Shown: positions 6,569 to 8,496 of the stretch, one piece after another
Layout: the number at the start of each line of letters is the position of its first letter
How positions within the stretch are numbered: the stretch's first letter is position 1
Source: Bugula neritina
Lineage: Eukaryota; Animalia; Bryozoa
NCBI GenBank assembly: GCA_964035545.1
Contig: OZ037770.1
Coordinates: forward strand, 7,121,827-7,185,826
Reading direction: 5' to 3'
Length of the DNA: 64,000 bases
The notes under the pieces: model-generated
Told to the model about the DNA's origin: nothing
Seen by the model: the letters and a program-made list of their open reading frames with translations, nothing else
Database searches by the model: none
Made by a program: the position numbers and the translations under genes

Positions 6569-8496
6569 AGGTATAGCAGAACTGACGTCGGTCGCGCCGC
6601 CTGAGCAACGGACGCGACCGGACGAAACAGAGTTGACGAACCGATCGATGAGGAGGTGTAGATTGGCCTGTGTGGCACAGATGTGACGTCGAGCGCGCCG
6701 CCTGGGAAACGGCGTGGCCGGACGCACAGAGTCGGCACCGAAAGAGTGCGCGACAGTTGTTGCTTTTTGATCTCTCTCCAAGGATCGTTGAGGTGTAGAG
6801 TGGCCTGTGTGGCACAGAAGTGACGTCGAGCGCGCCGCTTGAGCAACGGCGTGGCCGGACGCACAGAGTCGGCACCGAAAGAGTGCGCGACGGTTAACGG
6901 AATTGACGGCTAATGGAATTGACGGTTGGTTCTGACGCGTGCAGGTTTCCAAGGGCGCGTACAGAAGATGGAACAATAGCGGGTTGTTGGTCGATCCTTC
7001 GAGCGTTGGTTCTGTGTCGGTTCACTCGGGTATACACAGAGATCAGCACGACCGCCGGGCGCGCGCGACTTAGGTTGCGCGCGGCCGACGCCTGGGCCGC
7101 GACGGATCGCCCGCCGACCTCCCCCGCGGAGAGGACGGCCGGGCTCGAGCCGCCGGCCCGTGACCGTTGCGCCGAGCGGCCAGCTGGCGACTGGCCGCGC
7201 GCGCGGGGTGCGTACGACTCGTCGGGTACCGCCGGCAGGCGGGCCCGTCGGACCGTAAAGCCGGCGCCGATCGGCGCCGGTTACCGCTCAAAGAGCTCGC
7301 CGACGGCATCGTTCGGATGCGCGCGCGCCCCTGGCGCGCGCGCGCCGTCCCGGTGCGGGCGAGCCGCCTCAGGTCACGCCGCACACGTACCGACTGCGGG
7401 CGCCGGCTCCGCGCAAGGGGATTGGTTCACCTCGATACGCGGAGACCGGCGCAGACCGCCGGGCGCGCGCGACTCAGGTTGCGCGCGGCCGACGCCCGGG
7501 CCGCGACGGTTCGCCCGCCGACCTCCCACGCGGAGGAACGGCCGGAGTCGAGCCGCCGGCCCCAAACCGCCGCCCCTGCCAGCGGGCGAGCGCCCGGGCC
7601 GCGACGGTTCGCCCGCCGACCTCCCCCGCGGAGGAACGGCCGGAGTCGAGCCGCCGGCCCCTAAACCGCCGCCCCTACCAGTGGGCGAGCGCCCGGGCCG
7701 CGACGGTTCGCCCGCCGACCTCCCCCGCGGAGGAACGGCCGGAGTCGAGCCGCCGGCCCCTAAACCGCCGCCCCTACCAGTGGGCGAGCGCCCGGGCCGC
7801 GACGGTTCGCCCGCCGACCTCCCCCGCGGAGGAACGGCCGGAGTCGAGCCGCCGGCCCCTAAACCGCCGCCCCTACCAGTGGGCGAGCGCCCGGGCCGCG
7901 ACGGTTCGCCCGCCGACCTCCCCCGCGGAGGAACGGCCGGAGTCGAGCCGCCGGCCCCTAAACCGCCGCCCCTACCAGTGGGCGAGCGCCCGGGCCGGCC
8001 GCGACGGTTCGCCCGCCGACCTCCCCCGCGGAGGAACGGCCGGAGTCGAGCCGCCGGCCCCTAAACCGCCGCCCCTACCAGTGGGCGAGCGCCCGGGCCG
8101 CGACGGTTCGCCCGCCGACCTCTTCCGCGGAGAGGACGGCCGGAGTCGAGCCGCCGGCCCGTGACCGTTGCACCGGGCGGCCAGTTAGCCACTGGCCGCG
8201 CGCGCGGGGTGCGTACGACTCGTCGGGTACCGCCGGCAGGCGGGCCCGTCGGACCGTAAAGCCGGCGCCGATCGGCGCCGGTTACCGCTCAAAGAGCTCG
8301 CCGACGGCATCGTTCGGATGCGCGCGCGCCACTGGCGCGCGCGCGCCGTCCCGGTGCGGGCGAGCCGCCCCAGGTCACGCACTTGTACCGCAGACCGAAG
8401 CCAGGACCGAGCGAGGGCCCGCACCGCCGCCCCTGCCAGGGCGAGCGCGCGGGTCGACGCAAACCTCAAAGGCACAGCCCCGACTGTGCAAGGGAC
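6569..8496 (+). other. ITS1, unit 1 (1928 bp, internally repetitive). Equivalents at 19793-21720, 33135-35062 and 46359-48286
   Basis: Lies between the 18S 3' end and the 5.8S 5' end. Confidence 0.95.
7493..8160. repeat. ITS1 99-bp tandem repeat (6 copies plus a partial). Equivalents at 20717-21384, 34059-34726 and 47283-47950
   Basis: Unit CGCCCGGGCCGCGACGGTTCGCCCGCCGACCTCCCCCGCGGAGGAACGGCCGGAGTCGAGCCGCCGGCCCCTAAACCGCCGCCCCTACCAGTGGGCGAG. Confidence 0.95.

What the first reader, a model, noticed from the sequence alone, without database searches (positions are those of the whole stretch)
6751..7030. 5' ITS1 is a mosaic of short same-strand copies of conserved rRNA core sequences
Seen within ~280 bp of spacer: (i) GTTGCTTTTTGATC (6759-6772), identical to 28S 12285-12298; (ii) AAGGATCGTTGAGGTGTAG (6780-6798), like the 18S 3' end; (iii) TTAACGGAATTGACGG (6894-6909), 15/16 to 18S TTAAAGGAATTGACGG (5890-5905), immediately repeated as TAATGGAATTGACGG (6911-6925); (iv) GCAGGTTTCCAAGG (6941-6954), 13/14 to 28S 11232-11245, followed by GATGGAACAAT versus 28S GATAGAACAAT; (v) 6976-7013, about 29/39 to 28S 12277-12314; (vi) weakly, GGTTCACTCGG (7019-7029) versus 5.8S GGATCACTCGG. 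Established: the donors include the central-pseudoknot/h28 strand, the 18S 3' processing site and the helix 89/peptidyl-transferase loop, which are heavily engaged by snoRNPs and assembly factors. Inference: the spacer has captured rRNA micro-fragments, for example by template switching or cDNA patching within the array. They could act in the pre-rRNA as decoys or alternative pairing partners for snoRNAs, folding intermediates or antisense small RNAs. I do not know of a described system like this, but novelty is unverified.
Basis: partly seen in the sequence, partly recalled or inferred. Interest (0 to 1): 0.8.

Follow-up and report, generated by a model that had tools for sequence, protein, structure and literature searches.

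The report
rRNA core words copied into ITS1
In this marine animal and several relatives, the spacer after the 18S rRNA gene carries same-strand copies of a few highly conserved ribosomal RNA sequences; one is exactly the 11-base site that the assembly factor Nop9 grips on 18S rRNA, so the spacer may use a borrowed rRNA word to hold or time that factor.

Summary
Block ii is the start of a 137-nt tandem repeat that copies the 18S-end/ITS1 junction. Blocks i and v are two copies of the 28S helix-89/peptidyl-transferase strand; unit 5 of the window keeps an exact 18-mer. Block iii is a 16-nt minisatellite holding GGAATTGACGG. Blocks iv and vi are at chance level and are absent from the other ITS1 classes and from relatives. 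A metagenome scan found 13 related species with otherwise unalignable ITS1. Words from the conserved rRNA core occur in their ITS1 ten times more often than in shuffles, only on the sense strand, and not clearly in ITS2 or ETS/IGS. The 11-nt word of block iii is, at both edges, the published Nop9 binding sequence of 18S rRNA (yeast nt 1140-1150). Nop9 is already known to bind ITS1 in yeast and to block premature Nob1 cleavage, and the genome has a Nop9-like gene. My best reading: rRNA pieces were captured into ITS1, and the Nop9 word was retained as a spacer docking or decoy site. Binding is inferred, not shown. The 28S-like words remain unexplained. An earlier first-reader note on the neighbouring unit saw the same 28S-like copy.

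The parts
5895..5905 (+). Genuine 18S Nop9 binding sequence (central-pseudoknot 3' strand plus the start of helix 28); donor of block iii
   Evidence: Inside the Rfam SSU hit 4719-6568. The only match to the bipartite pattern in the unit's rRNAs. Equals yeast 18S 1140-1150 as printed in PMC5389560.
6556..6640 (+). Repeat unit R1: the true 18S 3' end/ITS1 junction (18S ends at 6568) plus the first spacer bases; template of the repeat
   Evidence: Alignment of R1, R2 and R3; direct-repeat families D5 and D12.
6641..6777 (+). Repeat unit R2 (about 137 nt); its tail carries the helix-89-like word
   Evidence: 6653-6758 is 94% identical to 6790-6895; alignment.
6759..6772 (+). Block i: exact 14-mer of 28S 12285-12298 (helix 89 3' strand by my reading); core word at 6762-6772
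   Evidence: One T-to-C change in ITS1 class D and in an RNA-library contig of another sample. Recurs in L031 and L033.
6778..6893 (+). Repeat unit R3. It begins (6780-6798, block ii) with a 17/19 copy of the 18S-end/ITS1 junction; the copy is 18/19 in class D
6889..6925 (+). 16-nt minisatellite (2.3 copies) holding two exact copies of the 11-nt Nop9 binding sequence, at 6899-6909 and 6915-6925 (block iii). The same copies occur in units 2-5 at 20123, 20139, 33465, 33481, 46689, 46705, 57936 and 57952
   Evidence: TRF; exact matches. Copy number is 2, 4, 2, 1 plus 1 broken, and 3 among the genome's ITS1 classes. Conserved in L036, L033, L034 and L048.
6941..6977 (+). Block iv (6941-6954 and 6967-6977): resemblance to 28S 11232-11272; judged to be chance
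   Evidence: Absent from classes C and D and from all relatives; expected by chance at this length.
6976..7013 (+). Block v: decayed second copy of the 28S helix-89/PTC-loop strand in ITS1 classes A and B (only a 10-mer is exact)
   Evidence: aligns with the better-preserved class C/D version.
7019..7029 (+). Block vi: 10/11 resemblance to 5.8S; judged to be chance
   Evidence: Expected many times by chance; does not replicate; changes in classes C and D.
58034..58051 (+). Unit 5 (ITS1 class C): exact 18-mer of 28S 12288-12305, the well-preserved form of block v
12285..12308 (+). Genuine 28S donor of blocks i and v (helix 89 3' strand running into the peptidyl-transferase central loop)
   Evidence: Inside the Rfam LSU hit 9053-12846. 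Matched by the window, L031 and L033. The helix assignment comes from my own alignment to E. coli 23S from memory.

Best explanation
ITS1 of this animal and of a clade of relatives contains sense-strand copies of a few invariant rRNA core sequences. They entered the spacer by intra-unit transfer of rRNA gene or transcript fragments and were then spread by the spacer's own tandem duplication. This part is shown or strongly implied.

Most of each captured fragment has decayed. The 11-nt word GGAAUUGACGG has been kept because it is the binding sequence of the PUF-like assembly factor Nop9. On 18S rRNA, Nop9 holds this strand single-stranded until the central pseudoknot and helix 28 may form. In yeast, Nop9 also sits on ITS1 next to the 18S 3' end and hinders Nob1.

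In this clade the spacer offers Nop9 one to four exact copies of its 18S site. They lie 70-160 nt after the 18S end, or 330 nt in the window because of the two extra repeat units. I infer that these copies recruit Nop9 to ITS1, take it over from the 18S site once ITS1 is transcribed, or both. That would time pseudoknot folding and protect the 18S 3' end from early cleavage.

The 28S-like words (helix 89/PTC strand, twice in the window) are real copies of the same origin. In the window's lineage they behave as decaying relics, and I assign them no function.
For: - **Real and non-random:** words from the conserved rRNA core occur in ITS1 of 15 sequences 82 times on the sense strand versus 7.8 +/- 3.7 in shuffles (maximum 20). 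The antisense strand has 4 versus 6.7, ITS2 6 versus 1.6, and ETS/IGS 4 versus 2.3.
- **Capture:** L033 ITS1 386-490 is collinear with 28S 12251-12389, and its flanks land at the expected place. Tandem spread is seen.
- **Inheritance:** carriers cluster in the window's clade, 5 of 7 rows with 100/97 support.
- **Identity with the Nop9 site:** all 7 exact copies outside 18S start at the same base, and the shared core ends at the same base. These edges equal the 11 nt ordered in the Nop9-RNA crystal, yeast 1140-1150 (PMC5389560).
- **Variation pattern:** the two one-mismatch copies in other species (L034, L048) change positions 5 and 6, which lie in the three middle bases that Nop9 does not read.
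- **Bipartite code:** GGA-NNN-GACGG occurs 14 times on the sense strand of close-clade ITS1 versus 0.59 in shuffles, once on the antisense strand, and once in all rRNA, at the true site.
- **Precedent:** Nop9 binds ITS1 and inhibits Nob1 in yeast (PMC5062617, PMC7373996).
- **Gene present:** a Nop9-like gene is seen as three collinear exon ORFs matching PF22493, one of them above the curated cut-off.
- **Accessibility:** the copies are more accessible than the median 11-nt window of their spacer, mean 79th percentile.
Against: - No binding data exist; the link to Nop9 rests on sequence identity with a site defined in yeast, with conservation supported by Arabidopsis APUM23 as cited in PMC5389560.
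- The distribution is patchy. L044, L065, L063, L038 and L050 lack the exact word in ITS1, so it is dispensable or replaceable.
- Within this genome one copy in class D has a change at a base that Nop9 reads, and copy number varies from 1 to 4.
- The accessibility result is confounded by A+T content, and the whole 5' ITS1 folds no better than shuffles (z = -1.3).
- The position test for mismatches has n = 2 (P about 0.07).
- Copies within one array are not independent.
- L033, the richest carrier, is a single metagenome contig.
- The yeast ITS1 site of Nop9 is a different kind of target (a stem base plus a 5' single strand), so a second single-stranded site in ITS1 is an extrapolation.
Confidence: 0.5

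Rival explanations
1. Neutral relics. Fragments of rRNA genes or transcripts were patched into ITS1, for example by template switching or RNA-templated repair in the highly transcribed array. They are simply decaying. The short exact words survive because captures are recent or repeated from favoured donors, and because array homogenisation keeps the units alike. They have no function.
For: - The edges of the helix-89 copies vary from copy to copy, and different paralogues keep different parts: the window's block i, the class A and class C forms of block v, and a variant contig from an RNA library.
- L033 shows a large fragment in decay.
- The phylogenetic distribution is patchy.
- The blocks are polymorphic among classes within one genome.
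- There is precedent for intra-unit transfer into ITS1 in Anopheles farauti (PMC9931795).
Against: - The 11-nt word is exact in seven copies in three species, and 10/11 in two more, while the rest of the 5' ITS1 cannot be aligned.
- Its edges coincide with a protein-defined site, and the base before it is never the A of 18S. This argues for one inherited motif rather than repeated capture.
- The same three donors recur out of 5.8 kb of rRNA.
- Conversion from the rRNA gene across an 11-nt island without flanking homology is mechanistically unlikely (my inference).
Confidence: 0.3
2. RNA-RNA decoy. The sense copies act in the pre-rRNA as alternative pairing partners for the natural partners of these strands (the 18S 5' end, which forms the central pseudoknot, and the 5' strand of helix 89), or for U3 or modification-guide snoRNAs.
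For: - The copies are on the transcribed strand and are identical to strands that pair in the mature ribosome.
- According to PMC5389560, the 5' half of the word pairs with 18S nucleotides 10-14 to form the pseudoknot.
- U3 box A pairs with 1139-1143 (PMC4340053), and this genome's U3 keeps the complementary bases.
- The 18-mer and 23-mer helix-89 copies would cover both arms of a pseudouridylation guide target (my inference from yeast numbering).
Against: - U3 pairs only with the first five bases, and the ITS1 copies replace the first of them. The conserved core runs 6 nt beyond the U3 duplex.
- The central-pseudoknot pairing also uses only five of the eleven bases.
- No covariation test is possible, because the partners are invariant.
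- Folding gives no signal.
Confidence: 0.13
3. Chance resemblance found by an attentive reader in a long spacer, helped by the general sharing of G+C-rich words between spacers and expansion segments.
For: - Blocks iv and vi are at chance level.
- The best local alignment in 6751-7030 is only marginal (P = 0.046).
- Chance 14-mers to expansion segments occur on both strands of the ETS.
- A same-strand excess against each species' own rRNA, including expansion segments, is also seen in ITS2.
Against: - The 18-mer in unit 5 has an expectation of about 2e-5.
- The same words replicate in independent species, on the sense strand only.
- The excess holds when the test is restricted to conserved-core words: 82 versus 7.8, and still about 41 versus 7 without L033.
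Confidence: 0.02

Closest known systems
Nop9 binding sequence on 18S rRNA and Nop9's ITS1 site in yeast (Wang & Ye 2017, PMC5389560; Zhang et al. 2016, PMC5062617; Zhang et al. 2020, PMC7373996)
   Same: The ITS1 word is identical, base for base and edge for edge, to the 11 nt bound in the Nop9-18S crystal structure. Nop9 is already known to bind ITS1 close to the 18S 3' end and to hinder Nob1.
   Different: The yeast ITS1 site is the base of a stem-loop plus a 5' single strand, not a copy of the 18S site. Here the spacer carries one to four tandem exact copies of the 18S site. None of the three papers I read mentions such copies. Binding here is untested.
Paralogous ITS2 insert ('5'-subrepeat', 287-291 bp) at the 5' end of ITS1 in Anopheles farauti (PMC9931795)
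   Same: Sequence from elsewhere in the same rDNA unit is inserted into the 5' part of ITS1. It is tandemly repeated, varies in copy number and turns over quickly.
   Different: There the donor is a spacer and the insert is long and clearly alignable. Here the donors are invariant rRNA core segments from both 18S and 28S, and all but one survive only as words of 11-23 nt.
Internal tandem repeats of ITS1 in invertebrates (aphids, beetles and parasitic worms, as listed in PMC9931795)
   Same: The 137-nt R units, the 16-nt minisatellite and the 99-nt repeats of this ITS1 are ordinary examples, with variation in copy number within one genome.
   Different: The R unit here starts with a copy of the 18S-end/ITS1 junction, and its tails carry words from the rRNA core.
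[quoted passage not shown]
   Same: It concerns the same 18S strand; the ITS1 copies contain four of the five paired bases.
   Different: The first paired base is replaced in every ITS1 copy, and the conserved core extends well beyond the U3 duplex. U3 docking does not explain the word.
Sharing of simple G+C-rich motifs between spacers and rRNA expansion segments ('cryptic simplicity'; recalled from the work of Hancock and Dover, not checked here)
   Same: A same-strand excess of shared words between spacers and the species' own rRNA is seen in ITS1 and ITS2.
   Different: The words at issue have about 50% G+C or less, come from the invariant core rather than from expansion segments, and are specific to ITS1.

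Membership tests
Nop9 binding site (NBS) | 11-nt sequence GGAAUUGACGG, with bases 1-3 and 7-11 read by PUM repeats 10-8 and 5-1 | tested here: met
   Exact at 6899-6909 and 6915-6925 and in units 2-5; sequence and read positions from PMC5389560.
Nop9 binding site (NBS) | Lies on the transcribed (RNA) strand of the pre-rRNA | tested here: met
   All copies are on the + strand inside ITS1, between the Rfam 18S and 5.8S hits. Across species there are 14 sense and 1 antisense matches.
Nop9 binding site (NBS) | Variation is tolerated only at the three unread middle bases | tested here: inconclusive
   Both one-mismatch copies in other species change middle bases (L034, L048), but n = 2. One class D copy in this genome changes a read base.
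Nop9 binding site (NBS) | Single-stranded when bound | tested here: inconclusive
   Unpaired probability is above the spacer median for all 9 copies (mean 79th percentile). Absolute values are low and the result is confounded by A+T content.
Nop9 binding site (NBS) | The organism encodes Nop9 | tested here: met
   Three collinear exon ORFs on G000:C7 match PF22493, with best E = 1.2e-06 and 28.2 bits against a cut-off of 27. The exons were searched one by one.
Nop9 binding site (NBS) | Nop9 protein actually binds it | not testable with these tools
   Needs EMSA or ITC and CLIP/CRAC.
Captured paralogous rDNA insert in ITS1 | Homology to another part of the same unit beyond chance | tested here: met
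   14-mer and 18-mer to 28S; enrichment of core words 82 versus 7.8.
Captured paralogous rDNA insert in ITS1 | Extended collinear homology in the flanks of the exact words | tested here: not met
   In the window no flank aligns at the collinear position. Only L033 does, with 2 strict hits out of 36 flank tests. The window therefore holds islands, not a recognisable fragment.
Captured paralogous rDNA insert in ITS1 | Tandem amplification and copy-number variation among units | tested here: met
   R1-R3, and 16-nt unit copy numbers of 2, 3 and 4 among ITS1 classes.
snoRNA target mimic | Complementarity to a guide RNA of this genome that explains the extent of the word | tested here: not met
   Tested for U3 only. 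Box A covers 5 of the 11 bases, and the first of them is replaced in ITS1. Modification-guide snoRNAs were not tested.
Spacer/expansion-segment cryptic simplicity | Shared words are G+C-rich simple motifs from variable regions, present in several spacers | tested here: not met
   Such a background exists. The words at issue come from the invariant core (mean G+C 0.50) and are enriched only in ITS1.

The most novel reading that the evidence does not exclude
ITS1 of this clade is a general landing pad or decoy built from sense copies of several functional-centre strands of both subunits: the Nop9 site at the central pseudoknot, helix 89 and the peptidyl-transferase ring, the sarcin-ricin loop, and the helix 31 and helix 34 strands seen in L033. 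Each copy would hold or take over the factor (protein or snoRNP) that guards the corresponding rRNA strand. Transcription and removal of one spacer would then time the release of assembly factors from the decoding centre and from the catalytic centre.
Probability: 0.12. Interest if true: 0.85.

Novelty: new variant of a known kind. Interest (0 to 1): 0.66.

Why it matters
How Nop9 leaves the central-pseudoknot strand, and how it reaches ITS1, are open points in small-subunit assembly. A lineage whose spacer carries exact tandem copies of the 18S Nop9 site is a natural experiment. It predicts direct competition between the two sites and makes a hand-over or timer model testable with simple binding and processing assays.

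More generally, the result shows that transcribed spacers can acquire pieces of the rRNA core and keep short words from them over long periods. That matters for models of rDNA concerted evolution.

It also matters in practice. These spacers contain sequences that overlap widely used 'universal' rRNA primer sites (my own knowledge), so amplicon work on this group may give off-target products.

Tried and rejected
- **U3 box A docking.** It covers only 5 of the 11 bases, and the first is replaced in every ITS1 copy. Rejected as an explanation of the word.
- **Extended 28S homology in the window.** Gap-friendly alignments suggested that 6930-7040, 57980-58090 and the R units are decayed copies of 28S domain V. 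The flank-only positional test did not support this outside L033, so I do not claim it.
- **RNA structure.** The minimum-free-energy fold of 6569-7040 is no better than shuffles (z = -1.3), so no structural argument is made.
- **IGS same-strand excess of 12-mers.** It is caused by G+C-rich subrepeats counted many times.
- **Taxon identification.** A search for the unusual 18S 3' end in the literature found nothing, and a paper on copepod rDNA had no relevant content. Names in the run search are coded.
- **Literature.** Seven searches found no description of rRNA-core copies or of Nop9-site copies in ITS1. Most subscription-journal papers are not in the library, so novelty is not proven.
- **PDB sequence search.** The two Nop9-like exons gave only weak PUF matches.
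- **Mrd1.** It cross-links near the site (helices 27 and 28), but no sequence-specific link to the word was found.
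Full report
**Setting.** The window holds five tandem rDNA units. In unit 1 the 18S gene is 4719-6568, ITS1 is 6569-8496, 5.8S is 8497-8649, ITS2 is 8650-9052 and 28S is 9053-12846. Public runs that hold the spacer are marine plankton and seawater samples; organism names are coded.

**Check of the observation.** I ran 1000 dinucleotide-preserving shuffles of 6751-7030 against the unit's own rRNAs, leaving out the last 28 nt of 18S. Same-strand shared 10-mers number 18 against 2.4 expected, and no shuffle reaches 18. The longest exact match is 14 nt (P about 0.01). The best local alignment is only marginal (P = 0.046). The reverse complement shares no 10-mer at all. Across 6569-7030 there are 15 same-strand exact matches of 10 nt or more and none on the other strand. 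A similar same-strand excess of 12-mers in the IGS comes from G+C-rich subrepeats counted many times.

**Anatomy of the 5' ITS1.** The spacer begins with three copies of a repeat:
- R1 (6556-6640) includes the true 18S end.
- R2 is 6641-6777.
- R3 is 6778-6893.

R2 and R3 are 94% alike over 106 nt. R3 starts with a 17/19 copy of the 18S-end/ITS1 junction. That is block ii, so block ii is a tandem duplication of the junction and not a separate capture. After a shared end the tails diverge. R2 ends in the 14-mer of block i, and R3 runs into a 16-nt minisatellite (6889-6925) that holds block iii twice. The rest of ITS1 is G+C-rich, with a 99-nt repeat (7493-8160) inside a 1-kb direct duplication.

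**An internal comparative panel.** The genome holds at least four ITS1 classes plus a truncated unit. Class A is units 1-4 of the window and class C is unit 5. Among the classes:
- Block iv is absent from classes C and D.
- Block i has a T-to-C change in class D.
- Block ii is closer to the real junction in class D (18/19).
- The minisatellite has 2, 4, 2, 1 plus 1 broken, or 3 copies of the word.
- Block v is much closer to the 28S in classes C and D, which carry an exact 18-mer of 28S 12288-12305 (window 58034-58051).

By simple counting an 18-mer is expected about 2e-5 times for this query size, and it hits the same 28S site as block i. Contigs from an RNA library of another sample carry the class D changes. 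They also include a variant in which another helix-89-like string sits at a repeat boundary. The 28S-like element therefore belongs to the repeat, and its copies decay at different places.

**Relatives.** A scan of metagenome contigs with the unusual 18S 3' end gave 40 loci with 34 distinct ITS1 starts. Thirteen species are 93-97% identical to the window in the last 600-900 nt of 18S. A second, A+T-rich group is about 81% identical. The ITS1 sequences of the close group cannot be aligned with one another in their 5' parts, yet they carry same-strand exact copies of rRNA core words:

| Locus | Words found in ITS1 (length in nt) |
|---|---|
| L033 | the block iii word (14 and 13), a helix 31 word (13), the sarcin-ricin loop (17), the helix 89/PTC strand (23 and 12), a second PTC strand (17, 17, 14), a helix 34 word (14) |
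| L036 | the block iii word three times |
| L031 | the helix 89 word (14) |
| L048 and L050 | the second PTC strand |

Helix names and E. coli equivalents are my own assignments from memory of the rRNA sequences.

**Statistics across species.** I defined core words as window rRNA 11-mers present in the rRNA of at least 7 of 8 species (1865 words, mean G+C 0.50). Counts are distinct core words:

| Region | Sense strand: observed vs null | Antisense strand: observed vs null |
|---|---|---|
| ITS1, 15 sequences | 82 vs 7.8 +/- 3.7 (maximum 20 of 300 shuffles) | 4 vs 6.7 |
| ITS2, 8 species | 6 vs 1.6 | 3 vs 1.6 |
| Window ETS plus IGS | 4 vs 2.3 | 0 vs 2.4 |
| ITS1 of the distant group | 0 (shared 12-mers against all window rRNA) | 1 |

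Seven ITS1 sequences are significant on their own: L031, L033, L036, L048, L050 and window classes A and C. Without L033, a single contig, the excess is still about 41 against 7. Comparison with each species' own rRNA, including expansion segments, shows a weaker same-strand excess in both ITS1 and ITS2. This is the known kind of G+C-rich word sharing between spacers and expansion segments, and it is a separate background.

The blocks were defined on the window alone, so the 13 other species are an independent test. Blocks i, iii and v recur, on the sense strand only, against expectations of 0.003-0.035. Blocks ii, iv and vi do not recur. On an 18S tree, five of the seven rows of the window's well-supported clade (100/97) are carriers. 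The successive outgroups are not carriers, and the long-branched L048/L070 is a weak one. I left out of the tree loci with under 100 nt of 18S (L048, L061), a locus replaced by a longer twin from the same ITS1 group (L050), and duplicates of the same ITS1.

**Fragments or motifs.** Gap-friendly alignment suggested long decayed homology to 28S domain V in several places. A stricter test takes only the flanks of each exact word and asks where in the rRNA they align best. It supports this only in L033, where the flanks land at 28S 12251-12323, collinear with the 23-mer and 17-mer. L033 therefore holds a real captured fragment drawn from about 140 nt of 28S. In the window the words are sharply bounded islands. 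The helix 89 copies differ in extent from copy to copy, as decaying fragments would.

The block iii word is different. All seven exact copies in three species start at the same base, and the shared core ends at the same base. The base before the word is always a pyrimidine, where 18S has A. The word is the only alignable island in the 5' ITS1 of five species. It lies 70-160 nt after the 18S end in L033, L036, L034 and L048, and at 331 and 347 in the window, behind the extra R units.

**What the word is.** The literature gives a precise match. Yeast Nop9, a PUF-like protein with 11 repeats, was crystallised with an 18-nt piece of 18S. Only nucleotides 1140-1150 are ordered and bound. The authors call these 11 nt the Nop9 binding sequence, and they are the block iii word, base for base (PMC5389560). 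Recognition is bipartite. Bases 1-3 are read by repeats 10-8 and bases 7-11 by repeats 5-1, while the middle three bases are not read. The authors note that the SELEX consensus of the Arabidopsis orthologue matches, so the specificity is old. [quoted passage not shown] Nop9 also binds ITS1 in yeast, next to the Nob1 cleavage site, and reduces Nob1 cleavage in vitro and in vivo (PMC5062617). That site is a stem base plus a 5' single strand, read in part by the same repeats. Neither structure paper mentions copies of the 18S site in a spacer.

**Tests of this reading.**
- The two one-mismatch copies in other species change positions 5 and 6, both among the unread bases (n = 2, P about 0.07).
- The bipartite pattern occurs 14 times on the sense strand of close-clade ITS1 against 0.59 in shuffles (maximum 4). 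It occurs once on the antisense strand, never in the distant group or in the window's ETS/IGS, and once in the unit's rRNAs, at the true site.
- L041, which lacks the word in ITS1, has an exact copy in ITS2.
- The genome has a Nop9-like gene. Three collinear exon-sized ORFs on contig C7 match PF22493, one above the curated cut-off. Their translations show S...E and S...D motifs of the kind tabulated for guanine recognition. I searched the exons one by one, built no joined model, and did not assign motifs to repeats.
- The copies are more accessible than the median 11-nt window of their spacers, at the 57th to 91st percentile. Their A+T content in a G+C-rich spacer could explain this.

**Alternatives examined.** U3 box A pairs with 1139-1143 (PMC4340053), and this genome's U3 keeps the complementary bases. 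But the first paired base is replaced in every ITS1 copy, and the conserved core extends 6 nt further, so U3 does not explain the word. Mrd1 cross-links nearby, without a sequence link to the word. A precedent for intra-unit transfer into ITS1 exists in Anopheles farauti, where a paralogue of ITS2 sits at the 5' end of ITS1 (PMC9931795). Seven literature searches found no description of rRNA-core or Nop9-site copies in ITS1. The library lacks most subscription journals.

**Conclusion.**
- Shown: ITS1 of this clade holds sense-strand copies of invariant rRNA core words.
- Strongly implied: the copies originate from captured rRNA fragments spread by tandem duplication.
- Inferred (about 0.5): the 11-nt word is kept because it binds Nop9, giving the spacer a docking or hand-over site that times central-pseudoknot folding and protects the 18S 3' end.
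- Unexplained: the 28S-like words. In the window's lineage they look like relics.

An earlier first-reader note on the neighbouring unit (s1-453850) saw the same 28S-like copy.

Noticed in passing
L041, ITS2 position 221 (locus): A species that lacks the Nop9 word in ITS1 has an exact 11-nt copy in ITS2 on the sense strand (expected 0.05).
   Followed up: partly
L048, ITS1 295-318 and 158-168: A helix-89-like word is followed directly by the antisense of the Nop9 word, about 150 nt after a sense copy with one mismatch. The two could pair (9 of 10 bases).
   Followed up: no
window 12880-12893: The 3' ETS, 34 nt after the 28S end, has a 12-mer (13 of 14) of the 28S A-loop hairpin at 12348-12361 on the same strand. 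By counting, this is chance level.
   Followed up: partly
G000:C6:7114959-7272664: The rDNA array is head-to-head: + oriented units, including the window, are followed about 9 kb later by - oriented units. ITS1 classes are clustered along it (C,A,A,A,A,C then D,D,D,D,truncated,B,B,B). Contig C135 has inverted partial ITS1 copies beside class C units (L019, L020).
   Followed up: no
window 44509-55756: Unit 4 to unit 5 spacing is 11247 nt, against 13224-13342 for the other units, so the IGS varies in length by about 2 kb.
   Followed up: no
window 7089-8380: The 3' half of ITS1 is a 99-nt tandem repeat (6.7 copies, 7493-8160) inside a 1-kb direct duplication (7089-7379 and 8090-8380, 96% identical). 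Unit 5 has an ITS1 111 nt longer.
   Followed up: no
L018 (G000:C6:7235140-7238493): One rDNA unit has a deletion variant of ITS1 that runs from three copies of the 16-nt unit straight into the 99-nt repeats. It lacks blocks iv-vi.
   Followed up: no
window 6546-6568 and loci L031-L070: The 18S 3' end reads ...CCTGCGTAAGG... where most eukaryotes have ...CCTGCGGAAGG... (my memory), so the common ITS1 forward primer would mismatch at its 3' end. The same 23-mer is shared with an A+T-rich group only 81% identical in 18S.
   Followed up: no
G000:C7:12850067-12852852 (L078:2568-5353, minus strand): A Nop9-like gene is seen as three collinear exon ORFs matching PF22493. No full gene model was built.
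   Followed up: partly
ITS2 of L034, L036, L065: ITS2 shares more same-strand 12-mers with the species' own rRNA than shuffles do (32 versus 12.7). They appear to be G+C-rich words from expansion segments.
   Followed up: no
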